Assembly: GCF_006345805.1 (NCBI RefSeq)
Contig: NC_043014.1
Span: 12,338,001 to 12,402,000, forward strand
Direction: 5' to 3'
From: Octopus sinensis
Taxonomy: Eukaryota
Length of the DNA: 64,000 bases
In this document: piece by piece, positions 16,005-64,000 of the stretch
Position numbering within the stretch: position 1 is the first letter of the stretch
Layout: each line of letters opens with the position of its first letter
Notes under the pieces: model-generated
Seen by the model: only the letters and a program-made list of their open reading frames with translations
The model's database searches: none
What the model was told of the DNA's origin: nothing
Translations under genes and position numbers: made by a program

Positions 16005-16042
<38 letters not shown>

Positions 16043-32600: not shown

Positions 32601-32632
<32 letters not shown>

Positions 32633-32941
32633 GTGTGTGAGTGTGCGTATATATATATATATATATAATAACAAAGGGTAAAATTAATTAATTAAGAAGT
32701 AATCAATAATTTTCCCCAAGTAGAATTCGGCATGAAAAAAGGACCATTTCATGGTAAACTTAAGTAATACTTAATAAATAGGGTTCAGCAAAGATTTGCT
32801 TTACCACATACCGAAGTTTAGAAATAGCAGCCAAAAACGTTAGCTATTTCTTCTACTTTAAAAAGGGACTCCCAGAAAAACCAAAAGTATGTGGTAAAGC
32901 AAATCTTTGCTGAACACCTATTTATTAAGTGTGTATATATA

Positions 32942-32988
<47 letters not shown>

Positions 32989-33686
32989 TAGATAGATATT
33001 GTTACCATCAGTTAACATCAGTTTTCCATGATGGCAGGATTTGGACATGTGTGGGGGTCTTTATGTATGTGTTTGTCCCCCTCCCCACTACTTGACAACC
33101 GGTGTTGGTGTGTTTACATCCCCATAACTTAGCGATTTGGCAAAAGAGACCAACAGAATAAGTACCAGGCTATATAAGAGATAATAAATACAGGGGTTGA
33201 TTCGTTTGACTAAAATTCCTCAAGGCAATGCTCCAGCATGGCTGCAGTCTAATGACTGAAACAAGTAAAAGATAAAAAATTATGATATACCTTGGTATTT
33301 TCAGAAGTCGAGACACATATCATTTTCTTCAGTGTGTCAATTGTATTTTGGTATTTCTTCTCCAATTGTTCTTTCTCTGAATCATTGCTTATGAATCTAT
33401 AATAAGGATTTAAGTTCTTCTGTGGAGTCTGTTTCTTATACTATGGGAAAATAAAAGAGAAATGTTATACACCAACAAACAAAAATGTTTCATAAATATT
33501 TTTTAAATATTAACAAGGCGCAGGTGTGGCTGTGTGGTAAGTAGCTTGCTAACCGACCACATGGTTCCGGGTTCAGTCCCACTGCGTGGCATCTTGGGCA
33601 AGTGTCTTCTGCTATAGCCTCGGGCCAACCAATGCCTTGTGAGTGGATTTGGTAGACGGAAACTGAGAGAAGCCTGTCATATATAT

Positions 33687-33720
<34 letters not shown>

Positions 33721-36700: not shown

Positions 36701-37806
36701 TTATAAATGACTAGCAATATCGCCAGGCGTTGCTCGGGTTTGTAAGGGAAATAACTATATAAGCATTTTTAGAGATGTAAAATATAATAGCCATCTCAAT
36801 ATGGCTAACCACAAAGGGGGGGTGTTACTGTAGCTTTTTAATAATACATTTTTAGAGAGTTACTTCCCTTATATATGCCAAAAATGTATTAAAAATGGGG
36901 AAAATTGATGGTAAATTTTTTTTTAAATCGTAGAATCATCATAGATGCGTGCTCGATATGAATCACGACTATAAGATACCCGGTTTTGGTTAAACTGCAC
37001 CGCAAAATGTGAGAGTAGTTAGGAATCTAAATCGTAGGAGACAGACAGCACACAACCTCTCTTTTATATATAAAGATATATATATCATCATCAACTTCCA
37101 TTTTCCATGTTGGCATGGGTTGGATGGTTTGAGAGGAACTGGCCAGCCAGAGAGCTGCCCAGACTCCAATTCTCTGTTTTAACATGGTTTCTACAGCTGG
37201 GTGCTCTTCCTAATGGCAACCACTTTACAGAGTGTGTATCATGTTTTTTTACATGCCACTGGCACGTGTGTATTTATGTAGCACCGACATGAGTGTATAA
37301 AATACTGAATGTAAATAAATACAGAACTGAAGAATGAATAGAAAAGTGATACAGATTAATGTATACAAAGAAGGGAAAAAAACTCAACAACATATTGTAG
37401 ATTCAGTCAAGAAATTAACATTGCTACTTACTCGCAGAGTGGAATGTGTCTCATCAATTGCAGTTGGGTTAATAGTGCAAATAATAGCAGTCTTTGAATT
37501 ACCTCCAAGACCATTCTGAAGTAATCTTGTCAACTTAGAATCTCTGTAGTTAATATGCTGGTGACTGGAAAATAAAACAAGAAAAAATTCACAATTTTAA
37601 ATGCAATGGAACATATAAAATATTGTACACACACTCAAGCATAGGCATGGCTGTGTGGTTAAGAAGTTTCATTCCCAACCACATGGCTTTGGGTTCAGTC
37701 CCATTGCATGACACCCTGAGCAAGTACTTTCAACTATAGCTCAGGGCTAACCAAACTCTTGTGAGTGGATTTAGCATGCAGAAAACAAAAGAAGCTCATT
37801 GTGTGA

Positions 37807-37845
<39 letters not shown>

Positions 37846-46800: not shown

Positions 46801-47793
46801 CTCGGAAGGCTTTCATTGGCCCAGTGCTATAGTAGTTGGAACTGAACCAGAAACCATGTGTATGGAAACAAATTTTTGACCACTGCCACAACTGCTATAG
46901 AATAAAGATTGAAACAGATCAAAACCAGCCAATTCTTGCTGGTGTTGCTCTAAGACTACAAGCCTGTCTTGCCAGAGCAGAATTCTGATAAAAAATAATG
47001 CCAACCCTGATCTTCCCATCTTTTCCTTTATCAGGTATAAATTTTCTAGGAGTAAACCTTAACCCTGAACCATGTTTTAACCCTTTAGTTTTCACATTAT
47101 TCTGCCAAAACTAATGCTTTTTTATCCACAATGTTTTGAACTAATCATGCATTATCTTGTAGCTATGAGATTTTGATGAGGTAGCTGTTAATTTTTAAGA
47201 TGATATTGTAGGGTTGGTGTGAGAGACCAGATCTGGCCAGTTTGAACATAAAACAAGCAGAATACTTTTGGGCGGATATGGCCGGTTTAAATGCTAAAGG
47301 GTTAAGAGAGATTTAACTACTATTTCTAGAAGGTTAGACAAGACAGAGGTTCCTTTACTGGTTCAAAACCAGCACTAGGAATAGAAATATACTTACAATC
47401 TCCTTTCTTCTTAATGGCTAACATATCATCTATGTTTTGAAAGACCATTTCCTTCAGCCCACTCACATGAACCACTCGATTCTGGGAACAATGGAGAAAG
47501 AACAAATTAGCTTGCTCCAAGAAACTTTTCTTCATGGAAATATCATATTTGACAGCATAGATGAAGGGAGGAGGAGGGGAAGAAGAAAAGGAAGGCAAAG
47601 AAGAAGAAAGCAAAGAGGCGGGGGAGGCGGGGGAGGAGGAAGAAGAGGAAGAAGAAAAAGTGGAAGAAAAAGAAGAGGAAGAAGAAGAAAAAGAAGAGGA
47701 AGAAGAAGAAAAAGAAGAGGAAGAAGAAAAAGGAGAGGAAGAAGAAGAAAAAGAAGAGGAAGAAGAAAAAGAGGAGGAAGAAGAAGAAAAAGA

Positions 47794-47826
<33 letters not shown>

Positions 47827-50800
47827 GGAAGAAGAAGAAGAAAAAGAAGAAGAAGAGGAAGGAGAAGATGAAGAAGTGGAGGAGGAGGAAGAAGAAGCAG
47901 CAGCCAGTGCCACCACCACCATCATTTAATGTCTGTTTTCTTTGCTGGCATGGGTTAGATGGTTTGACAGGAGCTGGTTAGGCAGAAAACTGCACCAGGC
48001 TTCACTGTCTGTTTTGGTAGGGGTTTTACAACTGGATGCCCTTCCTTACACCAACCACCTTACAGAGTGGATTGAGGGCTTTTTATACGGCACCAGCACA
48101 TTTTCCCCAACAAAAATTGTTACAGGCATGACCCTCCATGTCTCACACACAATCAGTGCCCCTAACCTCAAGATCCTTTGAATGAATCACATGCTGCACA
48201 GCCTAAAAGCATTTTGGCCTAGCATACTGCAGCCCATTTTGTGTTTGTGTGTGTGTGGCTCCTGCCAGAGAAGTACTCTTAACTTCCATATTAATCCTAC
48301 CAGAATCAGAGGACCTACAAAGGACATAGATTACAGCATCATCTCCAAGACCAAACTGTTAAAAAATATATTTTAAAAATCATTAGGATACATTGACCCC
48401 AACAGATTACTGTCCGATCTAGAAGAAATTTTTTTTTTTTATCCACTACCATAAAACTAGTAGAGGCACATGGCCTAGTGGTTAGAGCAGCGGACTTGTG
48501 GTCGAAGGATCGCGAGTTCGAATCTCAGACCGGGTGATGTGTGTGTTTATGAGAGAAACACCTAAGCTCCACGTGGCTCAGGTAGAAGGTAATGGCAAAC
48601 TTCTGCTGACTCTTTCACCACAACTTTCTCTCACTCTTTCCTCCTGCATCTTGCAGCTCACCTGCAACGGACCAGCATCCCGTCCAGGTGAGGAACCTAT
48701 ACATCAAGGAAACTGGGAAACTGGCCCTTATGAGCCAGGGATTGCTCCAGAAGGAACAAACAAACAAACCATAAAACCAAAGCTAAGACCAGCTTCTAAA
48801 AGCCTGTAGCAGGGTTAGATGGAATTTTGAAAAAAAAATTACCACTCCAGTTACCATCAGCATATCACAATGACAGAACAGAGATAAAAAGAAATCTTAT
48901 TGCAATATTATTTACCTCATCTTCCAATAGCTTCAGTGTCTTTTCTTCAACATCAAGCAAATCAGTGATTTTTTCATTATATATTTCCATGTATGAAACT
49001 CGCAGAAGAAACTGTCGATTTGGAGCCTTCAAATAAAAAAGAAAAGAAATGATAAAAAGAAGTCTTTCCCATTCTCTTACAACTGCCTTACAATGTCAAG
49101 ACAAGGAGAACACAAACATACATGTAAACACACACATACTTATGTATGATGAGTTTCTTTCAGTTTCCGGCTACCAAATCCAGTCACAAGATTTTGATCA
49201 GCCTGAGATTATAGTAGGATATACGTGCCCAAGATGCCACACAGCGGAACTGAACTTGAAATCATATTGTTGAGAAGCAAAGTCCTTAACCACAAATTTA
49301 TCTCTATAAACATTAAGGATAAGAAAAGGATCACTTTATGGTCCACAGTCCCAACACTGTTAAACCAATATAGTTTATAGTTTCCTGTACTAAATACTAT
49401 ATGGAACTGGAGGCGCAATGGCCCAGTGGTTAGGGCAGCGGACTCGCGGTCATAGGATCGCGGTTTCGATTCCCAGACCGGGTGTTGTGAGTGTTTATTG
49501 AGCGAAAACACCTAAAGCTCCACGACGCTCCAGCAGGGGATGGTGGTGATCCCTGCTGTACTCTTTCACCACAACTTTCTCTCACTCTTACTTCCTGTTT
49601 CTGTTGTACCTGTATTTCAAAGGGCCGGCCTTGTCACTCTCTGTATCACGCTGAATATCCCCGAGAACTACATTAAGGGTACACGTGTCTGTGGAGTGCT
49701 CAGCCACTTACACGTTAATTTCACGAGCAGGCTGTTCCGTTGATTCGGATCAACCGGAACCCCTCGTCGTCGTGACCGACAGAGTGCTTCCACTATATGG
49801 AACTGAATATGCTGGAAAACAGTTTTTAATACAAAATAACAAATTTCTAAGAGGGAAAAGTCCAATTTAATTAAGTGACCAAGATGTATGACTAGCCTTA
49901 CATAATTAACCCTTTCCAGATCATATTGCTAATGAAATACACTACCAATTGTTTGTGAAATACAGGCATCTCCCACTTTTGGAAGAGGTCCATTCTTAAA
50001 GAATTTTGCAATAATCTGAAGTTCTGTAATGTGAAACTGCTTTCCCCCAAAGGCACCACACCTAACATAATGCAAGAGACGATGACAATCATCAATTTGG
50101 AGGTGTTTATATTAAAATAACCAACTATTTCTTTGTTATGCTGGTGTTTGGAATATGACTTAACCCTTTCATTACTGTATTTATTTTGAGATGCTCTGTG
50201 TTTCTTAAAATTACTTTAAATGTAACAAAGAATTTAATAAAATAACTTAGTCATAATTCAGCTAGTGTCACGATCATAAATTGTGACTAAGGTTTGGTGG
50301 AAGATTTTAATTCGATACTTAGGAAAACAAGACATTTCTACGACAAAGCCAGAGCCAGTTTTGGCTGGGTTGGTATCAAAAGGGTTAAAGGGTCTTAAAT
50401 AAACTTATGAAATCAGAAATTTCTCATCATCAAACATCTCAGGTAAGTTAGCAACTAAGGAATAATGCAGATATTACAAACCACTGCAATTACCCCATGA
50501 CATTCACTGCAACCATGTGTCCCCTATCACGTGACGAAGCTATTTCCAGATTTAGATAGGTCTTCACTCCATATAAAATTTATCAGTAAGAATGTAGCAG
50601 AGAAAGCTTTGTAATTGTGACATCCTTTAGGACACTATCAAATGACATAATCAAACTATCTTTCAGCCAAACTGTAAATTGGCTGAGCAGAAGCCAATTA
50701 GGCTATCTTGATTAGTTCTATAACTAGCCAATTAGTAACCACCTTCCTGAGCCTCTTTTGCAGTATTTAAGGGAAATATAGTTAAAAATAGAAATGTAAA

Positions 50801-51828: not shown

Positions 51829-53953
51829 GACAGGCTTCTTTCAGTTTCCGTCTACCAAATCCACTCACAAGGCATTGGTCGGCCCGGGGCTATAGTAGAA
51901 GACACTTGTTCAAGATGCCACGCAGAGGGACTGAACCCGGAACCATGTGGTTGGTAAGCAAGCTACTTACCACACAGCCACTCCTGCGCCTATATAAAAC
52001 TATAATATAAACATAATAAAAGGAATAAAATGATATGGCTAACAATATCATTTCTTCATTGCTGTTTTTTTTCTTACCAAAGAAATGTCTCAAGTTTACT
52101 TACATTATCGATGGCATCAAACATGGACTGCATTGCCATTGGAATTATTCCTTTCTCTTCTTTTGACCCAGACATTGTGTAGGTTTTCCCTGAAGAAGTC
52201 TGGCCATAAGCAAAAATGGTTCCTAAAAATGATTAAAAAGTAAACATTATTTGTGTATGGGCAGAGAGAGGGAAGAGGATAGCTACGATGAGAGGAAGAG
52301 AGATGTTTACATTGAATTGATTTAAACAATGGCTCTATAGTTTAACCCTTTAACATTCAAATTACTCTCTCAAATGTAATGCTTATTTATTCACACTGTA
52401 ATCTACATTATCTTGTAGCTTCAAAGATTCCAATGACATGAAAGGTAGGTATGAGAGGCTGAATCTGGCCAGCTTGAACATAGAATAGGTATAAAATTTG
52501 GGCCAGTTTAAATGCTGAAGGGTTGATTATAATGCAATACAACAAACCACATACCAGGTCTTTATTCAGACAGGTGGCTATTTGCAACATTAATGAATGG
52601 CATAGGAGTGGCTGTGTTGTAAGTAGCTTGCTTACCAACCACATGGTCCAGGGTTCAGTCCCACTGCGTGGCACCCTGGGCTAATGTCTTCTACTATAGC
52701 CCTGGGCCGACCAAAGCCTTGTGAGTGGATTTGGTAGACGGAAACTGAAAGAAGCCCATCGTTTATATGTATATATATATGTATATGTTTCTGTGTTTGT
52801 CCCCCTACCATCGCTTGACAACCGATGCTGCTGTTTACATCCCCGTAACTTGGCGGTTCGGCAAAAGAGACCGATAGAATAAGAAGTACTAGGCTTACAA
52901 AGAATAAGTCCTGGGGTCGATTTGCTTGACTAAAGGCGGTGCTCCAGCATGGCTACAGTCAAATGACTAAAACAAGTAACAGAGTAAAATAGAATGTTAC
53001 GTTCACTATTTCCTACATTGCAGAGAATGAATTCTCATAAAAATGTACAGACTTATGCTTTATATAGTTTCATACACAGGGTTTGAGTCAAAACCTATGG
53101 CTAGAGTAGAAGGCACTCACCCAGTTGCTATGCAACTGAGAGACCAAAGAGAAAATCGTGATTGCAAAGGTGAGGAAGTGATGGAAGAGCACACCCCCTT
53201 CCTTCAGTCATGAATGACCATCAGATTGCACCTAGAAGGTTACCCTCAAAAAGCACCCACTACACTCGTGGAGTGGTTGGCGTTAGGAAGGGCATCCAGC
53301 CGTAGAAACTCTGCCAGATCAGACTGGAGCCTGGAGCAGCCCCTGGCTTCTCAGACCCCGGTCGAACCGTCCAACTCATGCTAGCGCGGAAAACGGACGT
53401 TAAACGATGATGATGATGAAGGTTGTTTAGAGATCAGCCTGCCCTCTCCATGCCACAGATGTTATCCAAGGGAAAGGCAAAGTCCGATACAGCTTGGCAC
53501 TAGTGCCGGTGCAGTTCATTTCTACAGCTGAACTGGAGCAACATGAGATAAAGTGTCTTAATCAATAACACAACACACAGCCTGGTCTGGGAATTGAAAT
53601 CGCTACCTCATGATTGTGAGCCCGATGCTCTAACCACTGAGCCATACCTTCACATATGATTACAAAGCAAACTTCTTAAGTGCACAACCACAGCTATTCC
53701 CATACTGCAAGACCAAGACTGAAGATGTGGCACCCTCTCAACCACATGGTTCCGGGTTCATTCCTACTGTGGGGCACCTTGGGTAAGTGTCTTCTACTAT
53801 AGCCTCAGGCTGACCAAAGCTTTGTGAGTGGATTTGGTAGACAGAAAGTGAAAGAAGCCTGTTGTATATATATGTGTGTGTGTATATATACATACATATA
53901 TATATATATATATACATACATACATATACACACACATATATATATGTGTGTGT

Positions 53954-54008
<55 letters not shown>

Positions 54009-57000
54009 ATATGTTTGTATGTCTGTGCTTGTCCCCTCAACATCGCTTGACAACCGATGCTGGTGTGTTTACACCCCCGTAACTTAGCGGTTTGGCAAAA
54101 GAGACCGATATAAGTACTAGGTTTACAAAGAAAAAGTCCTGGGGTCGATTTGCTTGACTAAAGGCGGTGCTCCAGCACGACAGCATTCAAATGACTGAAA
54201 GAGAGTAAAAGAGAGGAGTGAAAGAAAACAAAAAAATCTTAAATGAGAAAATTGCCTACCATTGAAACCCTCCATAGTGGCACAAATAATTGGTTCCACA
54301 GTTTCATGATAAATGTCTGCAGTGATGTCATTACAATCATAAACACGATCTACAAAAACAAAACAATGTTTCACCATTAGTATTTCTGTAATCAGCTGGC
54401 AGAATTGTTAGTATGCTGGATAGAAATAGCTAGAGACATTTGATCTATAGTGGGTATATGTGTGTTACCATTGTTAGGTCGGTGAAGTGCTGATTAGGTG
54501 TGGACTGCGTGTAAATGAAAAATAAACACTTACTAAATATAACAATTTTTATCCTTTTGGAGATGCATTGCAGGATGTTGTGGCATTCTTGCATGCACCA
54601 TTTAAATATAAACAGAGCAAGCAAATATATCATCAGGAAGTACCTAGTGAGAGAGAGGTATCACAACACCACGTGTAGGGCACTGAAGCAAAGAAAGAGA
54701 GCTGGCAGTCCTAGCTGTGGGCAGTTGGCAAGCTGACTGCCCAAAAGGGAAAGAGGAAGTGTCCTTTTAGTTGGGCTCCTTATATGCCTTTCATAACTTC
54801 TGTTAAGGGCTGTTGTGTTTTGCACATGCATTATGGCTGTCTGCTTTGTCCCTTCTGGGCCTTTTACGTTTAGCCCTGAGATAATCCAAGCAGTCATGGC
54901 AGGTATGCTACAGATCTATCTTAATGTTCTGAGTTCAAATTCCACCATGGTCAACTTTGCCTTTCGTCTTTTTGGGGTCATTAATTGGTAAAGGGGAAAA
55001 ATTCTGAAGCTTGGAATTTTGTTATTGGCGCAAATGTTGATGTATTGGCTGAATGCTATTTTTCTGTTTTTGGGAATTTTGATCTGGGATCTGTGCTGAG
55101 CCATCCTTTGATGTAGACTGTTTTTTGTTTGGCCTATGTATTGCTCTTGACACCCAGAGCAGGTTAGTGCATATATCAGGTTTTCCAAAGCACATGTGAA
55201 GCTGCTTTTCACTGTGAAACGTTGTGCCTGTTTGAAGGAGAACTCTGATCCCTCGATTAAATTGACGCATATCCCACAGTTAGGTCTTCCATATTTTTTT
55301 CACTGACGGCTTCTATGTTGTTGTTGAGTGTATTCGGGCTTGTGTTAGGAGACTTTCCATAGATTTGGGTTGTCTCTTGCTTTTTATGATGGTGTGTTTG
55401 AAGGATTAAGTACATTCTGAGATCCTTTTTATATACACATTACACACACACACACACACATGTATTTGTATATGCGTGTGAGTGAGCATATGTTTGTTTC
55501 CTTTATTCATTCATATTGGCTTGAATTAATCATTGCAATATCTCATAGCTTTGATATTTCAACAATGTGACTGGTTATTTTTAGAATGATAACATTGTAG
55601 GGTAGATGCGAGAGGCCAAATCAAGTTGGTTTGAGCATAAAAACAAGTAGAATATTTGGAGCAGATACAACCAGCTTAAACGCTAGAGGGTTAACGCCCA
55701 TTTTTTCATGCTGGCATGGGTTGGATGGATTTTATTATAGGATATTTTACACAAAGTGGCATAAATTGTTTGAAGATGAGGAAAAGATAACACGCTTTCA
55801 TCCTCTCTCAGTTTGCCAGCATTTCTGTTGACACCTTCCTTTAACAAGTAAAATTTAAGCACTTACCAAACATATATGACTGATTATTGGTTCCTTCTGT
55901 AGCTGAGATAATTCTCTTCTCTCTGGTTTGCCAAGCCAAGTCACTGCCATTGTGCTTCTCACTACAAGAGAAAAATATGTACATATAAAATTGGCTGTGT
56001 GGTAAGTAGCTTGTTTACCAACCACATGGTTCCAGGTGGCATGTGATCCGTGTATATATTTATATATAGAAAGAATTTGGTATAAATTGCAAATAATATG
56101 ATATATAATGATTTAATAAGAACTCCATGTAATCTATTATACTTCAAGAAGATACATCAAAGGAAATAGTGCCTCAGAAACAACTGTGAAGGCAAAAATC
56201 TTGAATATATCTTTCTATTATATATGACAATTGGAGAGAAAGTAATTCAAAAGTGGGCGTAACATTTTTACTAACTGACACAGAACATTCAAATTGCACA
56301 TAGTGGGAGAGTAACTATTCCTGAATAATTCTCCTTTACAGTTTTCTCTGCAGGCAGATAGTGGCAGCATTTTGCTTCTGCATAGAATCCATCAACTTCT
56401 TGATAAAAGCAAGGTGCAGATTGTCCAATATCCACAAAAGGTTGCAGCTTGTTAATAGAAATAACACCACTAACAAGAACAATCTGCATAGATGGATGAA
56501 AGAATTTAAAGAAGGGGAAATTGGCATTGGAAACAAGCCACACCCTGGAAGAACATTCACTATGACTACTGATGCAGATCACCAGTAGTTGGGAATGAAT
56601 TGATTTATGATCTATGACCTTGCTGCACAAAAGCATGGTGGTCACAATGCATTAAAGAAGATTAAGTATCGGAAAATGTATACAAAATGGGTACCTTAGC
56701 TACTGACACCCAATTTGGAAGAAAGAACGAACACCATTTTTTATCTGATTTTATCATCATCATCATCACTTAGCGTCCATTTTCCATGTTGACATGGGTT
56801 GGACGATTTGACAGGAGCTAACTAGCTGAAGGGCTGTTCAGGTTCCATGTCTGTTTTGGCATGGTTTCTATGGCTGAATGCCCTTCCTAATGCCAACCCC
56901 TTTACAGAGTGTATTGGGTGCTTTTATGCAGCACCGGCATGGGTGCTTTTTATGTGACACCAGCACCTAAGGGCCTGCAAGACTAGGGATGCTCAGTTGG

Positions 57001-58120
57001 AGAGGGTTGCAGGGGATGAACATGTATGCAAGGACAACCACGTTTTTTTCTTAATTTAATGTGTCTTTTCAAGCACAGCAAACCACCAAGAGTTTTGGTC
57101 CTGTCATCCTCTCTTTGAAACCTGTAGATCCTTAAGAGATGAAATGTGGGCTTATCCTTATGATTCAGATATCAAAAGTTCAGTACATGGAATGGACTTG
57201 CAACTTTTCTTCAAAACTTCAGAAGTTTGACCTTTTTGATACCAACCTACCCGAGATTGCTCCAGCTTCTATAACAAAAACTTTCTGTTCTAAATTATAA
57301 TCTTCCATCAATTAAATTAGTTTGTTAAATTATTCCAGACCCCAGCTTAATTATTAGAAAGTTATTTTACAAAATTCTTCATTATTTAAAAAATTAATTC
57401 AAACAAAGATAGCATTTGTTAACAGAAATTTGGAATAAGGCGGCGAGCTGGCAGAAACGTTAGAATGCCGGGCAAAATGCTTAGCGGTATTTCGTCTGCC
57501 GCTACGTTCTGAGTTCAAATTCTGCAGAGGTCAACTTTGCCTTTCATCTTTTCGAGGTCAATTAAATAAGTACCAGTTACGCACTGGGGTCGATATAATC
57601 GACTTAATCCGTTTGTCTTTCCTTGTTTGTCCTCTCTGTGTTTAGCCCCTTGTGGGTAGTAAAGAAATAGGTATTTCGTCTGTCGCTACATTTTGAGTTC
57701 AAATTCCACCGAGGTCAACTTAGCCTTTCATCCTTTCGGGGTCGATTAAATAAGTACCAGTAACGCACTGAGATCTATATAATCGACTTCATCTATTTGT
57801 CCGTCCTTTTTTATCCCTTCTGTGTGTAGCCCCCTGTGGGCTGTAAAGAAATAAGAAATATGGTAACAAAAGGGTAAAGAGCCTATGATCAGCACAAAGT
57901 CTGTTGGGACAACAAAGGAACCATTCTCCAAGATTTTTTCTAAGATATCTCTCAAGTGAGACTCAATTCCAACAACTAAGACAGTACCGATGATATCTAC
58001 GAGATTTACAGACTGCCTAAATAGCAGTAATGGTCATCCTGTAAGGAATGAAAAAGAAATAGAAGCTTACCGTTCATTAAGTGGCCGTAGTCGAATAACG
58101 ACTTGAATCTTGTCTGACAT
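1620..58120 (-). CDS. CENPE: CENP-E-like kinesin-7 (centromere-associated protein E), multi-exon, 3' end beyond window start. Coding exons: 58071-58120, 55867-55961, 54260-54349, 52104-52222, 48916-49026, 47397-47481, 45924-45991, 44615-44689, 40666-40796, 37432-37564, 35377-35502, 33291-33440, 30996-31065, 29332-29492, 25478-25563, 24180-24279, 9202-15132, 5362-5458, 3826-3953, 1620-1697
   Basis: Manual splicing: all exons are AG/GT-bounded with matching phases. The product is an N-terminal kinesin motor ([73 protein letters not shown]). It is followed by the CENP-E-type neck ([29 protein letters not shown]), RRKTWC at residue ~419 (human RRVTWC, T422) and >1900 aa of coiled coil. Confidence 0.9.
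2346..2929 (+). mobile_element. Solo LTR of the same family as 18112-18648
   Basis: TGTAAG..CCACTACA termini, 4-bp TSD CACT, alignable to the Gypsy LTR. Confidence 0.88.
3826..3953 (-). CDS. CENPE: CENP-E exon (N)[42 protein letters not shown]
   Basis: ttaacag/gtaagt boundaries; coiled-coil KxQEC motif like the repeat unit; phase 1 to 0. Confidence 0.82.
5362..5458 (-). CDS. CENPE: CENP-E exon [32 protein letters not shown](N)
   Basis: ctttttag/gtaagg boundaries; phase 0 to 1. Confidence 0.72.
5650..6117. mobile_element. MITE with ~50-bp TIRs and 8-bp TSD TGTGATTT, Merlin-like termini (GGCGA)
   Basis: ggcgaagtttcggttgtcgtagcacatgtttccgtcgatttccgtaaaaaa at one end and its near reverse complement at the other; TSD at 5642-5649 and 6118-6125. 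Confidence 0.8.
7424..8506 (-). mobile_element. 5'-truncated RTE-clade LINE: ORF2 C-terminus (8034-~8506), VNTR-containing 3' UTR and (GAT)n tail
   Basis: [37 protein letters not shown] is RTE-type; runs contiguously into the abundant GGCACGTAAAAAGCACC repeat. Confidence 0.88.
9202..15132 (-). CDS. CENPE: Giant (5931-nt) CENP-E coiled-coil exon with internal frameshifts
   Basis: Acceptor ttcttacag|GTG GAA, donor GAT CAG|gtattt. ORFs 12724-15144, 11897-12679, 11292-11903 and 9175-11061 are successive frames of one E/K/L-rich heptad sequence. Confidence 0.85.
9640..12880 (-). repeat. Coding tandem repeat, ~31 units of 105 bp (35 aa, [35 protein letters not shown] and variants); three units are 93 bp
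   Basis: Direct periodicity in DNA and protein; about 31 KS[QE]EC cores counted. Confidence 0.95.
15156..15612 (+). mobile_element. Solo LTR, second family
   Basis: TGTAGTG..CCTGTTACA termini; homologous to 38761-39221 (reverse) and 1-126. Confidence 0.7.
16073..16459 (-). mobile_element. Possible degenerate LINE apurinic endonuclease relic
   Basis: [18 protein letters not shown] weakly resembles the APE N-terminus (NxRGL..L.LTET). Confidence 0.35.
18738..19660 (+). pseudogene. gag: Gypsy gag (KIPPFW..DPALWF..IEAQF) with CHCC motif [18 protein letters not shown] at 19556-19609 in a shifted frame
   Basis: ORF 18738-19739 plus manual translation of the alternative frame. Confidence 0.85.
19690..22783 (+). 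pseudogene. pol: Gypsy pol (protease D-T-G broken by a 1-bp deletion, RT YIDD, RNase H LLVDASD, integrase HHCC and D-D-E), several frameshifts and a stop
   Basis: ORFs 19555-19860, 19863-20627 and 20639-22783; motifs [49 protein letters not shown]. Confidence 0.93.
24180..24279 (-). CDS. CENPE: CENP-E exon (S)[33 protein letters not shown]
   Basis: ttacag/gtatgt boundaries; phase 2 to 0, joins the giant exon in frame. Confidence 0.75.
25478..25563 (-). CDS. CENPE: CENP-E exon [28 protein letters not shown](S)
   Basis: ttccag/gtaaga boundaries; phase 0 to 2. Confidence 0.75.
26233..27192. mobile_element. TA-flanked TIR element (Tc1/mariner-type non-autonomous) containing the nested piggyBac MITE
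   Basis: TA|CTGTAAAAACCCATGTAATTT..AAATTACATGGGCTCTTACAG|TA. Confidence 0.6.
26767..26986 (+). mobile_element. piggyBac-type MITE, ~220 bp. Copies at 16793-17012, 28927-29143, 47081-47301, 5541-6226 (interrupted)
   Basis: TTAA|CCCTTTAG..CTAAAGGG|TTAA. Confidence 0.82.
27967..28166 (-). repeat. Intronic 200-bp copy of giant-exon segment 12536-12734
   Basis: By-eye alignment shows 2 substitutions and a 1-bp indel. Confidence 0.92.
29332..29492 (-). CDS. CENPE: CENP-E exon (D)[53 protein letters not shown]
   Basis: ttcacag/gtaggt boundaries; open frame, phase 1 to 0. Confidence 0.75.
29645..30025 (+). mobile_element. tRNA-derived SINE, young copy (near-identical copy at 49409-49790; relative at 48465-48760)
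   Basis: A box TGGCCCAGTGG, B box GTTTCGATTCCC; the two copies differ at few positions. Confidence 0.85.
30996..31065 (-). CDS. CENPE: CENP-E exon [23 protein letters not shown](D)
   Basis: RRxTWC motif at the expected position; ctttcag/gtttta boundaries. Confidence 0.88.
31556..31890 (+). repeat. 63-bp minisatellite, ~5.3 units, inside an RTE 3' UTR
   Basis: ggcacctgtgtcggtggcacataaaaaac.. recurs at 31618, 31681, 31744 and onward. Confidence 0.9.
32210..32420 (+). mobile_element. Degenerate RTE ORF2 C-terminal fragment (similar relic at ~58620-58780)
   Basis: Translates to [20 protein letters not shown], homologous to 8034-8200. Confidence 0.65.
33291..33440 (-). CDS. CENPE: CENP-E exon [50 protein letters not shown]
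   Basis: cccatag/gtatat boundaries, phase 0 to 0; [11 protein letters not shown] resembles human IENLTRMLVTS. Confidence 0.8.
33515..33915 (+). mobile_element. tRNA-derived SINE with central (TA)n/(TG)n microsatellite. Other copies at ~17125-17480, 25790-26110(-), 30460-30852(-), 51552-51990(-), 52600-52985, 53740-54210, 62335-62690(-)
   Basis: Head TGGCTGTGTGG..GGTTCAGTCCC; shared tail GTCGATTTGCTCGACTAAAGGCGGTGCTCCAGCATGGCCGCAGTC. Confidence 0.82.
35377..35502 (-). CDS. CENPE: CENP-E alpha6/neck-linker/neck-coil exon [42 protein letters not shown]
   Basis: Aligns by eye to human [40 protein letters not shown]. Confidence 0.93.
36711..37076 (-). mobile_element. Non-autonomous Helitron (copies at 40192-40479(-), 51141-51528(+); a related family at ~39402-40138(-))
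   Basis: 5' TC, 3' hairpin CCCGAGCAACGCCGGG followed by CTAG/CTAA, inserted between A and T, no TSD. Confidence 0.75.
37432..37564 (-). CDS. CENPE: CENP-E exon [44 protein letters not shown]
   Basis: Microtubule-binding [11 protein letters not shown] motif; ttccag/gtaagt boundaries. Confidence 0.95.
38761..39221 (-). mobile_element. Solo LTR, second family
   Basis: Reverse complement aligns to 15156-15612; near-TSD gacc/gact. Confidence 0.68.
40666..40796 (-). CDS. CENPE: CENP-E switch II exon [43 protein letters not shown](S)
   Basis: DLAGSE and INKSL motifs; LGQVIxKLSDG is CENP-E-like. Confidence 0.95.
41595..42005. mobile_element. TIR-bounded MITE (GGATCTTTTCG..CGAAAAGATCC); second copy at ~63132-63533 interrupts the hAT fragment
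   Basis: Terminal inverted repeats and a shared interior between the two loci. Confidence 0.7.
44615..44689 (-). CDS. CENPE: CENP-E exon [25 protein letters not shown]
   Basis: IIES start typical of CENP-E after switch I; ttgtag/gtaagt; phase 0 to 0. Confidence 0.85.
45924..45991 (-). CDS. CENPE: CENP-E switch I exon (S)[22 protein letters not shown]
   Basis: NxxSSRSH motif; ttccag/gtaagt boundaries. Confidence 0.93.
47397..47481 (-). CDS. CENPE: CENP-E exon [28 protein letters not shown](S)
   Basis: VxGLxE motif; cccag/gtaagt boundaries. Confidence 0.88.
47561..47900 (+). repeat. Purine-only (GAA/GAG)n low-complexity tract, ~340 bp
   Basis: Direct reading. Confidence 0.95.
48916..49026 (-). 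CDS. CENPE: CENP-E exon [37 protein letters not shown]
   Basis: Conserved SYMEIYNE motif; phase 0 to 0. Confidence 0.95.
49409..49790 (+). mobile_element. tRNA-derived SINE, paralogue of 29645-30025
   Basis: Direct sequence match. Confidence 0.85.
50164..50384 (+). mobile_element. Second piggyBac-type MITE family, ~220 bp (copies at 4254-4473, ~35002-35220)
   Basis: TTAA|CCCTTT..AAAGGG|TTAA with a different interior. Confidence 0.75.
52104..52222 (-). CDS. CENPE: CENP-E P-loop exon (G)[39 protein letters not shown]
   Basis: Canonical kinesin P-loop; ttttag/gtaagt boundaries. Confidence 0.95.
54260..54349 (-). CDS. CENPE: CENP-E exon (D)[29 protein letters not shown](G)
   Basis: Kinesin FDRVF..GxNG segment; ttgtag/gtaggc boundaries. 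Confidence 0.92.
54985..55300 (-). mobile_element. Penelope-like element GIY-YIG endonuclease fragment
   Basis: [36 protein letters not shown]. Confidence 0.8.
55867..55961 (-). CDS. CENPE: CENP-E exon (R)[31 protein letters not shown](D)
   Basis: ttgtag acceptor, gtaagt donor, phase 2 to phase 1, fits both neighbours. Confidence 0.85.
56361..56700 (+). mobile_element. Mariner transposase N-terminal HTH relic
   Basis: [31 protein letters not shown] resembles mariner IHxRL..VYG..RWxxxFxxG..DxPRSGRP. Confidence 0.7.
57438..57850 (+). mobile_element. MetaSINE-like element with a tandem headless second copy. Other copies at ~24985-25210, 38140-38340, 45267-45410, 45422-45648(-), 54915-54985
   Basis: tRNA-like head (GAGTTCAAATTC B box); central GTCGACTTTGCCTTTCATCCTTTCGGGGTCGATAAATAAGTACCAG resembles the Meta domain (from memory). 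Confidence 0.7.
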
Positions 58121-58130
58121 TTTATTCAAT
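58071..58130 (-). CDS. CENPE: CENP-E first coding exon, [16 protein letters not shown](R); ATG at 58120, 10-nt UTR
   Basis: Acceptor tcttttgcag, donor CG|gtaagc, kinesin beta-1 motif VxxRxRP. Confidence 0.9.
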
Positions 58131-60326
58131 CTGCAAAAGATAAAACAATATCATCATCATCATCATATTTGTTTAATGTTTACCTTCCATGCTGGCATGG
58201 GTGGAACAAATCAAATGGAAAGCAAAATGTTTTATACAATAATCCCTCGACTATTGCGGGTGTTACATTCCAAAACCTCCCACAGAAATAATTAAAATCT
58301 AAAAAAGTATAAATACCTATCAGCCACAAAAACCCAGATTTACTGAGGAGTCCATGATATAAATTTACATATATTCGCCAGAAAAATCTGCAATGTACTG
58401 AGTGCACAATAGGTGAACCACGATATGGTGAGGGATTACTGTATATCAACCCTTTAGCATCTATACCAACCACATCAAACCCAAATATCCTATCTGTTTT
58501 ATGTTCAAACTGGTCAGATCTAGCTTCTCATACCTGTCCTACAATGTCATTCTAAAAATATACAATGACATCATCAAAATGTCGAAGCTACAAGATAATG
58601 CATGGTTAATTCTAGGACAGTTGCGTGAGGAAGTGCAGATCTCTAACTGTGGAGGGAACCTAGGGAAAGACATGATCTTTGGATGCTGAGTCTCACAGAG
58701 TGATGACAAATGATTGAGATCTTTGGCAAATTGCTGTACTCAGAAGACTTGTCAAGCCAAGTGAAATCGTAGTCATGGACTGTGCCGGGGACACATAAAA
58801 GGCACTTATGCCAGTGACATGTAAAAGACACTGACTACACAATTGGAATGGTTGATATTAGGAAGGGCATCCAGCTGTAGAAACCAAGCCAAAATCAGAC
58901 TGGAGCCTAGTACAGCTCTCCAGCTTAGCTGTTTCGGTTAAACCATCTAACCCATGCCAGCATAGAAAACAGACACAAAATGATGATGATGTTAATAGAT
59001 AAGATAATCTGAATGCTAAAGAGTTAAAGGCCAAAAGAGATTATCATTACAAGCATTGGCACTAGGTCAACATTTGTGTGTGAGCAGAATTTTTTAAGTT
59101 ACTTCACTAGCACTTAGTTTATTGGCCTTTGGAAGGATCCAGCCATTTTCTCTGCCTTCTATTCCCGGGAGGGTTGTTGGGGTATAATCCTAAGGCATCT
59201 TTTTCATAGGGTCCTATCAAAAGCAATTGTCATTACACTTTCCAGCTGGATTACCAAGTGTGACCAACTGAAAGTATAGATATCATCTAACTATTTCATT
59301 CTTAGGTTACCCCTCGGTCTCCTGCCGGTTGGCTCAGCTTGAATAATCAATCTTGCAATTCTCTCTTGTGCCATTCTAATCACATGTCCATGGTACAAAT
59401 GCTGTGACCTTCCTGATCACCGAGGTTATACACCCTGTCAAGTAACATAACTCCATAGATCCATTTGAGGAGCCCCGTTTGTGATCATATTGTGCCAATG
59501 GCACGTAAAAAGCACCATCCGAACGTGGCCGATGCCAGTGGCGCCTTGACTGGCTTCCGTGCCGATGGCACGTAAAAAGCACCAACCCGATCGTGGCCGT
59601 TGCCAGCCTCGCCTGGCACCTGTGCCGGTGGCACGTAAAAAGCACCCACTACACTCTCGGAGTGGTTGGAGTTAGGAAAGGCATCCAGCTGTAGAAACAC
59701 TGCCAGATCAGACTGGAGCCTGGTGCAGCCTTCTGGCTTCCCAGATCCCCGGTCATACTGTCCGACCCATGCTAGCATGGAGAACAGACGTTAAACGATG
59801 ATGATGATTGTTTAACACAAGATATTTTTATGAGTTATTACATGTCATTTATGTAAATAAGATATAATGCATTAAACAATAACACACTATTCAAATAATA
59901 TCATAACAGTTTAACATTCTAAGACAACAAGTGTAATTAAGTGAAGAATTGCTAAAATGTGGATCGTGGGAATTTAAGGAGTTGAAACTAAAGCTTCTTG
60001 TAAATATTGTAGATGTGAACTAAAGGCAAAATTCCAAGACTTAAAACTCCCAACAAACTCTAAGAGAACATACTAATGCAACATCTTTGAAGAACATCTC
60101 GCACATTACTATCTTATAATGTGTCATGTCAACATGAAGGATCGGTTAAAGAAATGTGGGCCATCTTTCGTTTTCACCCGCAGAACATAGTCATGCGAGT
60201 CATTCAGTTGACTTATACAAGAATAATAATGGTGTTAGCAAAACTGTATCTAATCTGAAAATGCACCATACAAAATATAATTCCATAATTCCTGACTGCA
60301 ACTATTTATGTTAGAAAAAAAAAAGC

Positions 60327-60490
60327 TCGGATTTTTTGCGTGGAATCAAGTACCCTGACCTCCTTAATATGTTGCAAATCCCATATTTTGGTTCGGAGGG
60401 GGGGGGGTTAGCCCCACCCTTCCGAACCCAAATATGGGATTTACAGCATATTACGAGGTCAGGGTACTTGATTCCACGCAAAAAATCCGA
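60327..60490. repeat. Long imperfect inverted repeat (~75-bp arms, short loop)
   Basis: tcggattttttgcgtggaatcaagtaccctgacc at the left and ggtcagggtacttgattccacgcaaaaaatccga at the right. Confidence 0.9.
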
Positions 60491-60970
60491 TTTTTTTTTT
60501 TCTTAGTGAAAATCGTGCGGGTGTTAATCTGTAATTTTACCGAAAAAAATGTTTTATTTTGACACATTCTACCAGTTTACGAAGTTTAAGTGTTTAGTTA
60601 ACTAGAAATTGTGTTGAAAACTGCTGTTCAAAAGGAAAAGATCCCATTAACAGTATACAAACCAACCAGAAAATATTCGCTATACTATATAATAATAATA
60701 ATAATAATAATAATAGAAAAACTTGGTAAACGGCTATAACAGTAATGACTTATGCAATTTGAAACACAAACGTGCGTGTCAAAATATTAGTGTTATTTTC
60801 CTACGTTATATCCGTACTTTGGTCTACTAGTTAGAAAATACTTATGTATATATAAAATAACTAAATCAAAAGCACTTTACAATTCTGCTGATTATATAGA
60901 GATTAAGGATATTCTGTTCACTTTTAATAAGGGCATATTGTCCAACATCATATATATACATGCATACATT

Positions 60971-61074
60971 AAAATTGGTGATCTTCGAACTTATATATAT
61001 ATATATATTATATATATATATATATATATGTGTGTGTATATATTATATATATAAGTTCGAAGATCACCAATTTT
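60971..61074. repeat. Perfect ~29-bp inverted repeat flanking an (AT)n/(GT)n spacer
   Basis: aaaattggtgatcttcgaacttatatata at the left and tatatataagttcgaagatcaccaatttt at the right. Confidence 0.92.
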
Positions 61075-61260
61075 ATTTTTTTTAGATAAATTACAAAAAA
61101 TATTTAGATTTTGATGCTATTCAAAAGAAATCGGACATTTCCTGAGAAGTGGGAGAGCTGACTTGAAAGTGATGTCGGGTGAAACTATGACAAATAACAA
61201 GTATAAACAAGCACCTTAATTACTGTTAATATTAGAAGTCCAAACATTTATTGTACTTAC

Positions 61261-61355
61261 GTTTATTTGAGATTGTGTTTACATACACGATGTAACCAAG
61301 ATATAATAATATCGAACAGAAATCGTTCGGCTTCTGATAAAACGCAAACAGTGAA
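61261..61355 (-). other. CENPE: Putative non-coding first exon of CENP-E (TSS approximate)
   Basis: The ATG exon has its own splice acceptor, so an upstream exon is required. A strong gtaagt donor lies at 61255-61260, just downstream of the CHR/CCAAT cluster. Confidence 0.55.
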
Positions 61356-61362
61356 TACAAAA

Positions 61363-61457
61363 TTCAAACTTTAACGAAAACGAATGAGGAACATAATTTA
61401 AGCTTGCCACGCTTGTATTTCATTGGTTGATTAAAATAAACTACTGATGTTGATTGG
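61363..61457 (-). promoter_or_regulatory. G2/M-type promoter module: CHR (TTTGAA, 61363-61368) and two CCAAT boxes (61422-61426, 61453-61457; 31-bp spacing)
   Basis: Motifs read directly; the arrangement matches the NF-Y/CHR architecture of late cell-cycle promoters. Confidence 0.6.
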
Positions 61458-61734
61458 TCAATAAATTTGCAACCGGTGTAGACGGAATAAAAGTAACTGT
61501 GGATAAATCTGATGTGTTGATAAATTTTTCTAACAGAAATTTTACAGTCATTTACTTTTCCTTGACATTATAAAATAAGAAATTATTTTGAAACAAATAT
61601 AACCAAGTCTTTGTATATTGCAATTAGATCTAATTTAATATATAATTGATTCTTCCGTTTCATAGTTGAAAACATAAAAAGAGAAGTCAGTTCCCGCTGG
61701 AACTCCGAACGTTATTGTGCTTTTAATAAATGCC

Positions 61735-62037
61735 GCATGCAATATTTACTTATCTTCATTTGCTTCTTGTGTTTAAAACCTCTTTGTGACATTTCTATCT
61801 CCCAATCTCTCTATCTAGGTATAATTAATTATTTTATTCTGTCTAGGTATAATGAGATAAATACGAAACAGCATGCAATATTTACCTATCTTCATTTGCT
61901 TCTTGTGTTTAAAACCTTTTTGTGACATTTCTATCTCCCAATCTATCTATCTAGGTATAATTAATTCTTTTATTCTATCTAGGTATATTTCACTCTTTTA
62001 TTCTATCTAGGTATAATGAGATAAATACGAAACAGCA
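61735..62037 (+). repeat. 136-bp tandem duplication upstream of the CENATAC ATG exon
   Basis: gcatgcaatattt at 61735 and 61871; internal attct(a/g)tctaggtat subrepeats. Confidence 0.88.
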
Positions 62038-62121
62038 GTGCTGAAGAAGTAAAGCAATTCAACCTTTAGTAAACACGGTGTTGCATTGTTTACCTTTTCA
62101 TTTAGAATTACAGAATTAATC

Positions 62122-62253
62122 ATGTCTTCTGACCCACAGCAATTCCAGTTTTGCTCTATATGTCATGCAAGTCATACTGGAGGTAAAAAACACGTCTATT
62201 CCAAGAAACATAAATTGTTTCTAGATAAGGCATTGCAGCGGTTTGATGAGAAA
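62122..62253 (+). CDS. CENATAC: CENATAC/CCDC84-like first coding exon MSSDPQQFQFCSICHASHTGGKKHVYSKKHKLFLDKALQRFDEK (N-terminal C2H2-type zinc finger)
   Basis: CxxC..G..HVYSxKH matches, from memory, human CCDC84 [21 protein letters not shown]. Donor AAA|gtaagt; acceptor-like ttttcatttag just upstream. The rest of the gene lies outside the window. Confidence 0.8.

Positions 62254-62749: not shown

Positions 62750-64000
<1,251 letters not shown>

What the first reader, a model, noticed from the sequence alone, without database searches (positions are those of the whole stretch)
61261..62253. CENP-E and CENATAC/CCDC84 are head-to-head within about 0.8 kb
Seen: the putative CENP-E first exon (minus strand) and a CCDC84-like zinc-finger exon (plus strand, ATG 62122) diverge from one short region. 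Established: CENP-E drives chromosome congression. CENATAC is a minor-spliceosome-associated factor whose loss causes mosaic variegated aneuploidy, and the human genes are unlinked. Inference: a shared bidirectional promoter may co-regulate a mitotic motor and a splicing factor needed for mitotic fidelity. I do not know of this linkage being described.
Basis: partly seen in the sequence, partly recalled or inferred. Interest (0 to 1): 0.7.

Follow-up and report, generated by a model that had tools for sequence, protein, structure and literature searches.

The report
Octopus CENP-E and CENATAC genes head-to-head
In Octopus the genes for the mitotic motor CENP-E and the minor-spliceosome factor CENATAC really do sit back-to-back and may share a short promoter region, but other molluscs checked lack this pairing, so it looks like a recent rearrangement rather than a conserved regulatory unit.

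Summary
The window is Octopus sinensis DNA (100% identical to GCA_006345805.1). The plus-strand exon 62122-62253 is exon 1 of a 355-aa CENATAC/CCDC84 protein: it passes Pfam's cut-off on its own and matches the annotated octopus proteins exactly. The minus-strand gene is a kinesin-7/CENP-E. Its best solved-structure match is the human CENP-E motor, and it has a very long coiled coil.

The two genes are head-to-head in three independent Octopus assemblies. Their coding starts are 4.0 kb apart (58120 and 62122). The "0.8 kb" figure depends on a non-coding CENP-E exon 1 ending at 61261. That exon is plausible but unproven:
- the ATG exon begins at a strong 3' splice site;
- 61261 is followed by a consensus GTAAGT donor;
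- just upstream lies a G2/M-type module of two NF-Y-type CCAAT boxes 31 bp apart plus a CHR TTTGAA, unique in the window (0.09 expected).

No transcript data could be reached, so co-regulation is untested.

The pairing is absent from Argonauta, a cuttlefish, a gastropod, a mussel, Lingula and amphioxus. In the mussel, gastropod and cuttlefish, CENATAC is head-to-head with GPS2 instead, which is probably the ancestral molluscan state. Verdict: a real, lineage-specific head-to-head pair of a well-known kind, of modest interest.

The parts
62122..62253 (+). CENATAC/CCDC84 exon 1 coding part: 44 aa carrying the first C2H2 zinc finger (C11, C14, H18, H24). GTAAGT donor at 62254. Exon 2 lies outside the window, at about +5.3 kb.
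61369..62121 (.). Divergent intergenic / candidate shared promoter region between the CHR element and the CENATAC ATG. It is 28% G+C with no CpG island. The CENATAC transcription start is unknown, and acceptor-like sites at about 62105 and 62113 leave room for an upstream non-coding exon.
61735..62037 (+). 136-bp tandem repeat (1.9 copies) with a 28-bp sub-repeat, inside the intergenic region. O. vulgaris has one copy fewer; the blastn matches suggest O. bimaculoides also has a single copy.
61453..61457 (-). Distal CCAAT box (GACCAATCA, NF-Y-type flanks).
61422..61426 (-). Proximal CCAAT box (AACCAATGA), 31 bp from the distal one.
61363..61368 (-). Canonical CHR element TTTGAA, downstream of the CCAAT boxes and about 100 nt upstream of the donor. 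The inferred CENP-E transcription start lies at or just downstream of it.
   Evidence: PMC4176359 and PMC3287175 for the architecture.
61261..61345 (-). Putative non-coding exon 1 of CENP-E. The 5' end is not determined. The 3' end is at 61261, with a GTAAGT donor at 61260-61255. It contains only a minimal ATG-TAA upstream ORF.
   Evidence: sequence; inferred. No transcript evidence.
58131..61260 (-). Inferred CENP-E intron 1 (3.1 kb). It carries inverted repeats and a (TA)n tract.
58071..58130 (-). CENP-E exon 2, the first coding exon. Acceptor ttttgcag|, ATG at 58120, peptide [16 protein letters not shown](R), donor gtaagc.
   Evidence: The annotated CDS start in O. sinensis, O. vulgaris and O. 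bimaculoides falls at the same position.
55867..55961 (-). CENP-E exon 3: (R)[31 protein letters not shown](D).
   Evidence: phase-consistent AG...GT search. The resemblance to the N-terminus of human CENP-E is recalled from memory.
54260..54349 (-). CENP-E exon 4: [30 protein letters not shown](G).
52104..52222 (-). CENP-E exon 5 with the P-loop GQTSSGKT.
9178..49030 (-). Rest of the CENP-E motor and the giant coiled-coil exons. Motor landmarks: [15 protein letters not shown] about 49030-48920, switch I 45953, switch II 40787, LGGN 37509. Coiled-coil exons span 15165-9178. Boundaries are approximate.

Best explanation
This is a head-to-head pair of two protein-coding genes in Octopus: CENP-E (kinesin-7, minus strand) and CENATAC/CCDC84 (plus strand). 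It arose by a lineage-specific rearrangement in the octopus lineage.

Shown: both gene identities, the orientation, coding starts 4.0 kb apart, the same layout in three Octopus species, and its absence elsewhere.

Inferred: CENP-E is transcribed from a G2/M-type promoter made of two NF-Y CCAAT boxes 31 bp apart plus a CHR TTTGAA, at 61457-61363. Transcription would start near the CHR, run through a non-coding exon of roughly 60-100 nt ending at 61261, and splice over a 3.1-kb intron to the ATG exon at 58130. Under that model the CENP-E start lies about 0.75 kb from the CENATAC ATG, so the two genes have adjacent and possibly overlapping promoters.

Speculative: whether the NF-Y/CHR module also drives or gates CENATAC. 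The simplest reading is two neighbouring promoters brought together by chance, with at most partial co-regulation.
For: CENATAC exon:
- Pfam CCDC84 at 35.6 bits on the 44 aa alone.
- 100% identity to residues 1-44 of the annotated O. vulgaris protein P0121, whose full-length Pfam E-value is 1.3e-57; the same 44 residues start the O. sinensis protein.
- The zinc-finger residues C11, C14, H18 and H24 are invariant in a 7-species alignment.

Kinesin:
- Best database names are CENP-E.
- The best solved structures are the human CENP-E motors 1t5c and 6m4i at 224 bits, against 183 bits for the next family.
- Pfam Kinesin at 281 bits, starting at residue 10.
- Kilobase-long coiled-coil ORFs.

Layout:
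- The window is identical to the O. sinensis assembly.
- A kinesin on the minus strand ends 3.4-4.0 kb before the CENATAC ATG in O. vulgaris, O. sinensis and O. bimaculoides.

Non-coding exon 1 and promoter:
- A strong acceptor lies 10 nt before the ATG.
- A consensus donor sits at 61260.
- The composite CCAAT-N26-30-CCAAT-N20-90-TTYGAA occurs once in 64 kb on both strands, against 0.09 expected, and it lies exactly here in the CENP-E orientation.
- This architecture, with the CHR on or close to the TSS, defines G2/M promoters. Human CENPE is listed among DREAM-bound genes with identified CHR sites (PMC3287175, PMC4176359).

Derived state:
- Argonauta has a TPT-family transporter upstream.
- Cuttlefish, gastropod and mussel have GPS2 head-to-head with CENATAC.
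- No kinesin exons were found in those loci.
Against: - No transcript, CAGE or expression evidence was available, so neither transcription start is mapped.
- The CENATAC ATG is itself preceded by acceptor-like sequences (ttttcatttag, attacag). Its true start could therefore lie in an upstream exon elsewhere.
- Conservation of the CCAAT/CHR/donor block in O. bimaculoides carries no weight. The whole 4-kb interval, intron included, is 90-95% identical.
- The motif model comes from mammals. DREAM/CHR use in molluscs is assumed, not shown.
- The intergenic region holds a copy-number-variable tandem repeat, which suggests weak constraint.
Confidence: 0.6

Rival explanations
1. A selected, truly shared bidirectional promoter. 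One NF-Y/CHR control region co-regulates CENP-E and CENATAC, so the splicing factor needed for chromosome congression is expressed together with the congression motor.
For: The inferred inter-gene distance is under 1 kb. NF-Y-dependent bidirectional pairs of mitotic genes are documented, for example PRR11-SKA2 (PMC5372550) and FOXM1-RHNO1 (PMC8104967), both. CENATAC loss causes congression defects (PMC8280824). The layout is kept in three Octopus species.
Against: The pairing is absent from Argonauta, cuttlefish, gastropod, mussel, Lingula and amphioxus. The three Octopus species are so close (90-95% identical in introns) that retention says little about selection. The module is oriented for CENP-E. 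A variable 136-bp tandem repeat sits between it and CENATAC. There are no expression data.
Confidence: 0.2
2. The two promoters are not close. The sequence ending at 61261 is not a CENP-E exon, and CENP-E starts elsewhere, either in another unrecognised 5' exon within 58131-61260 or directly at the ATG exon. The genes would then be merely divergent neighbours about 4 kb apart.
For: The only hard coordinates are the coding starts, 4.0 kb apart. The exon-1 call rests on motifs alone.
Against: The ATG exon begins at a strong polypyrimidine-CAG acceptor only 10 nt before the ATG. The only CCAAT-CCAAT-CHR composite in the window lies directly upstream of a consensus donor at 61260.
Confidence: 0.18
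3. The adjacency is an assembly or annotation artefact.
For: None found. The annotated CENP-E lengths do differ (1726, 2032 and 2479 aa), which shows the models are imperfect in the repetitive stalk.
Against: Three independent assemblies of three species show the same collinear 10-kb region. Both 5' coding exons are intact, with proper splice sites.
Confidence: 0.02

Closest known systems
NF-Y-dependent head-to-head pairs of mitotic genes (human PRR11-SKA2; FOXM1-RHNO1)
   Same: Two divergent protein-coding genes, at least one with a mitotic or kinetochore role. CCAAT boxes lie in a short intergenic region, on the inferred start sites here.
   Different: Here neither transcription start nor co-expression is shown. 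The region is AT-rich rather than a CpG island. The pair is confined to one genus, and one partner is a minor-spliceosome factor.
G2/M promoters of the CCAAT-CCAAT-CHR type (cyclin B2, CDC25C, human CENPE; DREAM/MMB-FOXM1 targets)
   Same: Two CCAAT boxes with NF-Y-type flanks about three helical turns apart (31 bp, against about 33 bp). A canonical TTTGAA lies downstream, where the transcript is expected to begin. The orthologous human gene is a CHR/DREAM target.
   Different: No adjacent CDE or E2F site. Binding and cell-cycle regulation are untested in any mollusc. The start site is inferred.
GPS2-CENATAC head-to-head pair of other molluscs (Mytilus edulis, Gigantopelta aegis, Acanthosepion pharaonis)
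   Same: CENATAC exon 1 faces a divergent neighbour at 1.1-8.4 kb (coding start to coding start).
   Different: There the partner is GPS2 (G-protein pathway suppressor 2), not CENP-E. Octopus and Argonauta have lost that partner, and no GPS2 lies within 62 kb upstream in O. sinensis.

Membership tests
CENATAC / CCDC84 (Pfam PF14968) | Sequence match to the family profile above the curated cut-off | tested here: met
   The 44-aa exon scores 35.6 bits against a 25.3 cut-off. The full-length O. vulgaris protein P0121 scores 196 bits, E=1.3e-57.
CENATAC / CCDC84 (Pfam PF14968) | N-terminal C2H2 zinc finger 1 (PMC8280824 describes two N-terminal C2H2 fingers) | tested here: met
   C11, C14, H18 and H24 are invariant in alignment A1 of 7 species. 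All four lie in the window exon.
CENATAC / CCDC84 (Pfam PF14968) | Second zinc finger and conserved C-terminal motifs (PPW, IGP, RVGA, WLPSFG) | tested here: met
   Present in the octopus proteins P0121 and P0217, but encoded outside the window.
CENATAC / CCDC84 (Pfam PF14968) | Association with the minor spliceosome; role in AT-AN intron splicing | not testable with these tools
   Known for the human protein only (PMC8280824).
Kinesin-7 / CENP-E | N-terminal kinesin motor domain | tested here: met
   Pfam Kinesin at 281 bits, protein residue 10 aligned to profile position 1. P-loop, switch I, switch II and LGGN motifs are present in order.
Kinesin-7 / CENP-E | Motor closer to CENP-E than to other kinesin families | tested here: met
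   Best PDB matches are the CENP-E motors 1t5c and 6m4i (224 bits), against kinesin-2 at 183 bits. Named database hits are CENP-E or KIN-7. No phylogenetic tree was built.
Kinesin-7 / CENP-E | Very long coiled-coil stalk | tested here: met
   Open exons of 813, 277, 211 and 633 aa, rich in E, K, L and heptad-like repeats, at 15165-9178. Annotated products are 1726-2479 aa. No formal coiled-coil prediction was run.
Kinesin-7 / CENP-E | C-terminal kinetochore-binding and second microtubule-binding regions | not tested
   The 3' end of the gene appears to run off the window.
Bidirectional promoter (divergent transcription starts less than 1 kb apart) | Head-to-head orientation of two genes | tested here: met
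Bidirectional promoter (divergent transcription starts less than 1 kb apart) | Transcription starts less than 1 kb apart | tested here: inconclusive
   Coding starts are 4.0 kb apart. The under-1-kb figure holds only with the inferred non-coding exon 1. No transcript data.
Bidirectional promoter (divergent transcription starts less than 1 kb apart) | Correlated expression / shared cis elements acting in both directions | not testable with these tools
   No expression or reporter data are reachable.
G2/M CHR/NF-Y promoter | Two or more CCAAT boxes about 33 bp apart plus a CHR (TTTGAA) downstream | tested here: met
   CCAAT at 61457 and 61426 (31 bp apart), TTTGAA at 61368-61363. The composite is unique in the window, with 0.09 expected.
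G2/M CHR/NF-Y promoter | CHR on or close to the transcription start; DREAM/MMB binding; G2/M expression | not testable with these tools
   The start is inferred only from the donor 100 nt downstream.
Conserved microsynteny block | Adjacency retained in distantly related lineages | tested here: not met
   Present in three Octopus species only. Absent in Argonauta, Acanthosepion, Gigantopelta, Mytilus, Lingula and Branchiostoma.

The most novel reading that the evidence does not exclude
In the Octopus lineage a rearrangement placed CENATAC beside the NF-Y/CHR (G2/M) promoter of CENP-E, replacing its ancestral partner GPS2. A minor-spliceosome factor required for chromosome congression has thereby become cell-cycle-regulated together with the congression motor. 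This would be a lineage-specific regulatory rewiring created by cephalopod genome reshuffling.
Probability: 0.12. Interest if true: 0.45.

Novelty: new member of a known kind. Interest (0 to 1): 0.25.

Why it matters
If the two genes really share a G2/M control region, Octopus offers a natural experiment. A splicing factor whose loss causes congression defects and aneuploidy in humans would be transcriptionally coupled to the congression motor. It would also be a concrete case of new regulatory neighbourhoods created by the extensive gene-order reshuffling of cephalopod genomes (PMC9023564). As things stand, it is one of the many head-to-head pairs that any animal genome contains. The more solid by-product is the apparently ancient GPS2-CENATAC pairing in molluscs and its break-up in octopods.

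Tried and rejected
- The word-index homologue search with the 44-aa peptide found nothing. The full HMMER scan was needed.
- Phylogenetic footprinting of the promoter against O. bimaculoides and O. vulgaris has no resolving power, because the background identity is 90-95% even in the intron.
- Look-ups of O. sinensis isoform X2, Pecten maximus and Mya arenaria CENATAC were not on record.
- I tested whether CENP-E itself carries a CENATAC-dependent AT-AC (U12-type) intron. The only RTATCCTY site next to coding-like sequence (27945, minus strand) sits after a diverged copy of a coiled-coil exon and is not a convincing exon boundary. The idea was dropped.
- Rfam scan of 58000-64000 gave only sub-threshold miRNA-like matches to inverted repeats in CENP-E intron 1, and nothing in 61261-62253.
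- A TATAAA at 61569 on the plus strand was considered as a CENATAC TATA box. It is not conserved in O. bimaculoides (an inserted T), so it is weak.
- The supplements of the cephalopod microsynteny paper do not mention CCDC84, CENPE or GPS2.
- There is no GPS2 in the window or in the octopod loci.
- Suspected hAT-transposase-like ORFs in CENATAC intron 1 gave no Pfam match.
Transcript-derived contigs for either 5' UTR could not be found: the CENATAC clusters hold NCBI records only.

Full report
**What the window is.** Window 57900-62300 is 100% identical to the Octopus sinensis assembly GCA_006345805.1 (CM016876.1; locus L005 5779-10179). Window 52001-64000 is 99.2% identical to O. vulgaris GCA_951406725.2, and the alignable parts are about 85-94% identical to O. 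bimaculoides. It is ordinary, repeat-rich octopus nuclear DNA at 28-50% G+C.

**The plus-strand exon.**
- ATG at 62122, 44 open codons, GTAAGT donor at 62254.
- The peptide MSSDPQQFQFCSICHASHTGGKKHVYSKKHKLFLDKALQRFDEK alone passes Pfam's curated threshold for CCDC84: 35.6 bits against 25.3, matching profile positions 1-35 of 330.
- A full HMMER scan of 1.8 billion representatives returned a 350-aa protein, P0121, identical over residues 1-44. It is the annotated O. vulgaris CCDC84-like protein and scores E=1.3e-57 against PF14968.
- The O. sinensis protein P0217 (355 aa, "coiled-coil domain-containing protein 84-like") starts with the same 44 residues. Its exon 2 lies about 5.3 kb further on, outside the window.
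- In a 7-species alignment C11, C14, H18 and H24 are invariant. [quoted passage not shown]

**The minus-strand gene.**
- P-loop (GQTSSGKT, 52205), switch I (SSRSH, 45953), switch II (DLAGSE, 40787) and LGGN (37509) lie in order on the minus strand.
- Joined exon peptides give Pfam Kinesin at 281 bits, starting at residue 10, so the motor is N-terminal.
- Against all solved structures the two best matches are the human CENP-E motor (1t5c and 6m4i, 224 bits). The next family, kinesin-2, scores 183 bits.
- The best named database homologues are CENP-E / KIN-7.
- Downstream lie huge open exons of repetitive E/K/L-rich coiled coil (15165-9178).
- The gene is a kinesin-7/CENP-E orthologue, within the limits of a best-hit argument.

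**Its 5' end.**
- The first coding exon is 58130-58071: acceptor ttgttttatcttttgcag|, 10 nt of leader, ATG at 58120, [16 protein letters not shown](R), donor gtaagc.
- Exon 3 is 55961-55867, found by a phase-consistent AG...GT search.
- Exon 4 is 54349-54260 and exon 5 (P-loop) is 52222-52104.
- The annotated coding starts in O. sinensis, O. vulgaris and O. bimaculoides fall on the same ATG.
- The hard number is therefore 4.0 kb between the coding starts (58120 and 62122), not 0.8 kb.

**Is there a CENP-E exon ending at 61261?**
- Nothing near 61261 encodes kinesin sequence, so such an exon would be non-coding.
- Three things favour it:
  - The ATG exon starts at a strong 3' splice site only 10 nt before the ATG, so an upstream exon is expected.
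  - On the minus strand the sequence reads ...CTCAAATAAAC|GTAAGTAC, a consensus donor with its G at 61260.
  - About 100-200 nt upstream on the same strand are GACCAATCA (61457) and AACCAATGA (61426), 31 bp apart, followed by TTTGAA (61368-61363).
- The composite CCAAT-N26-30-CCAAT-N20-90-TTYGAA occurs once in the 64 kb on both strands, against 0.09 expected from composition-matched simulations.
- This is the signature of G2/M promoters: CCAAT boxes about 33 bp apart activated by NF-Y, and a CHR bound by DREAM/MMB-FOXM1 lying on or very close to the transcription start (PMC3287175 and PMC4176359). Human CENPE is in the list of DREAM-bound genes with identified CHR sites.
- The candidate exon holds only a minimal ATG-TAA upstream ORF.
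- The block is intact in O. vulgaris and O. bimaculoides. That means little, because the whole interval, intron included, is 90-95% identical between these species.
- I rate the exon-1/promoter model at roughly 60-70%.
- The CENATAC start is equally unmapped. Acceptor-like sequences just before its ATG (ttttcatttag, attacag) leave room for an upstream non-coding exon.

**The region between.**
- It is AT-rich (28% G+C).
- It contains a 136-bp tandem repeat (61735-61987) with a 28-bp sub-repeat running to 62037.
- O. sinensis has one more copy than O. vulgaris, and the blastn matches suggest that O. bimaculoides also has a single copy.
- No Rfam family matches inside 61261-62253.

**Is the linkage conserved?** I took CENATAC orthologues from a profile search and fetched their genomic neighbourhoods. 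Ranges are CDS-based.

| Species | Upstream neighbour of CENATAC | Distance between coding starts |
|---|---|---|
| O. vulgaris | kinesin, minus strand | 3.9 kb |
| O. sinensis | kinesin, minus strand | 4.0 kb |
| O. bimaculoides | kinesin, minus strand | 3.4 kb |
| Argonauta hians (another octopod) | TPT-family transporter, same strand, ending 2.3 kb upstream; no kinesin exons in the locus | not applicable |
| Acanthosepion pharaonis (cuttlefish) | GPS2 (G_path_suppress), head-to-head | about 8.4 kb |
| Gigantopelta aegis (gastropod) | GPS2, head-to-head | 1.1 kb |
| Mytilus edulis (mussel) | 449-aa gene with four collinear exon matches to Gigantopelta GPS2, head-to-head | 1.7 kb |
| Lingula | Nop52 | 0.2 kb |
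| Branchiostoma lanceolatum | LMBR1; this CENATAC-like gene is intronless and may be a retrocopy | 0.7 kb |

- No GPS2-like sequence lies in the window or in the octopod loci.
- The most parsimonious reading is that GPS2<->CENATAC is the ancestral molluscan head-to-head pair. It was broken in octopods, and the CENP-E adjacency arose in the lineage leading to Octopus.
- Coleoid cephalopods are known for large-scale loss and gain of microsynteny (PMC9023564).
- From my own knowledge, the human genes are on 4q24 (CENPE) and 11q23.3 (CENATAC).

**How it most likely works.**
- CENP-E is probably driven by an NF-Y/CHR G2/M promoter about 0.7 kb from the CENATAC coding start.
- The two genes therefore have adjacent, possibly overlapping promoters. 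NF-Y sites can act in both directions, as in the human PRR11-SKA2 pair (PMC5372550).
- Whether CENATAC is actually co-regulated is unknown.
- Three things make chance juxtaposition with at most partial co-regulation the more likely explanation: the absence of the pairing outside one genus, the orientation of the module towards CENP-E, and the variable repeat between the module and CENATAC.
- The functional echo is real but indirect. Human CENATAC loss causes congression defects, which the authors consider secondary to minor-intron mis-splicing (PMC8280824).
- I looked for a CENATAC-type AT-AC intron in octopus CENP-E and found none convincing.

**Novelty and score.**
- I found no paper that describes the linkage. 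It is, however, plainly visible in three public annotations.
- The kind of feature, a head-to-head gene pair with CCAAT boxes, is well known. I file it as a new member of a known kind, with interest 0.25.
- The most novel reading not excluded is a lineage-specific capture of CENATAC by a G2/M promoter. I put it at about 12%.

Noticed in passing
L009 8244-8351 and 10001; L006 8773-8889 and 10001; L003 1421-1528 and 9896: CENATAC is head-to-head with GPS2 (G-protein pathway suppressor 2) in a mussel (1.7 kb), a gastropod (1.1 kb) and a cuttlefish (about 8.4 kb). This looks like an old molluscan microsynteny that is broken in Octopus and Argonauta. I found no mention of GPS2, CCDC84 or CENPE in the supplements of the one cephalopod microsynteny paper I searched.
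   Followed up: partly
window 61735-62037: A 136-bp tandem repeat with a 28-bp sub-repeat lies in the intergenic region. O. sinensis has one more copy than O. vulgaris, and the blastn matches suggest a single copy in O. bimaculoides too. Each unit carries a CCAAT and TATAAT-like strings on the plus strand.
   Followed up: partly
window 60301-60516 and 60970-61075: Two inverted-repeat (hairpin or MITE-like) elements sit in the inferred CENP-E intron 1. The second has perfect 32-nt arms around a (TA)n tract. They give only sub-threshold miRNA-family matches in Rfam.
   Followed up: partly
window 9178-12730 (minus strand): The CENP-E stalk is built of many near-identical repeats of about 33 aa (…[31 protein letters not shown]…). 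The reading frame changes between adjacent long ORFs. The annotated products differ widely (1726 aa in O. vulgaris, 2032 in O. sinensis, 2479 in O. bimaculoides), so the models or assemblies of this repeat array are probably unreliable.
   Followed up: no
window 27960-28160 (minus strand): A diverged copy of the start of the coiled-coil exon at 12730 ([43 protein letters not shown]…) lies 15 kb upstream of it. It is followed by ATATCCTC. It could be an alternative exon, a pseudo-exon or a segmental duplicate.
   Followed up: partly
window 54919-55299 (minus strand): An ORF with a GIY-YIG nuclease domain (Pfam 26.4 bits) lies inside a CENP-E intron, presumably a remnant of a mobile element.
   Followed up: partly
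window 62326-62689, with many other copies (e.g. 30457-30856, 33516-33927, 52604-52995): A dispersed repeat of about 380 bp (SINE-like, 82-90% identical copies) occurs many times in the window and in the octopus loci. One copy sits in CENATAC intron 1, just after exon 1.
   Followed up: no
L007 1111-5564 and 10001-14804: Lingula anatina has two 546-aa CCDC84 genes 8.9 kb apart with near-identical first exons. One lies inside the annotated range of the divergent Nop52 gene. This is either a tandem duplication or an assembly duplication.
   Followed up: no
L008 10001-11035: The Branchiostoma lanceolatum CENATAC-like gene P0175 is intronless (its DNA translates directly to the protein). Another CCDC84 entry exists on a different contig. 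It may be a retrocopy.
   Followed up: no
window 47329-47977 (minus strand): A long CT/TTC-rich low-complexity tract (poly-Ser/Phe/Leu in all frames, strong G/C and A/T skew in the profile) lies directly upstream of a CENP-E motor exon.
   Followed up: no
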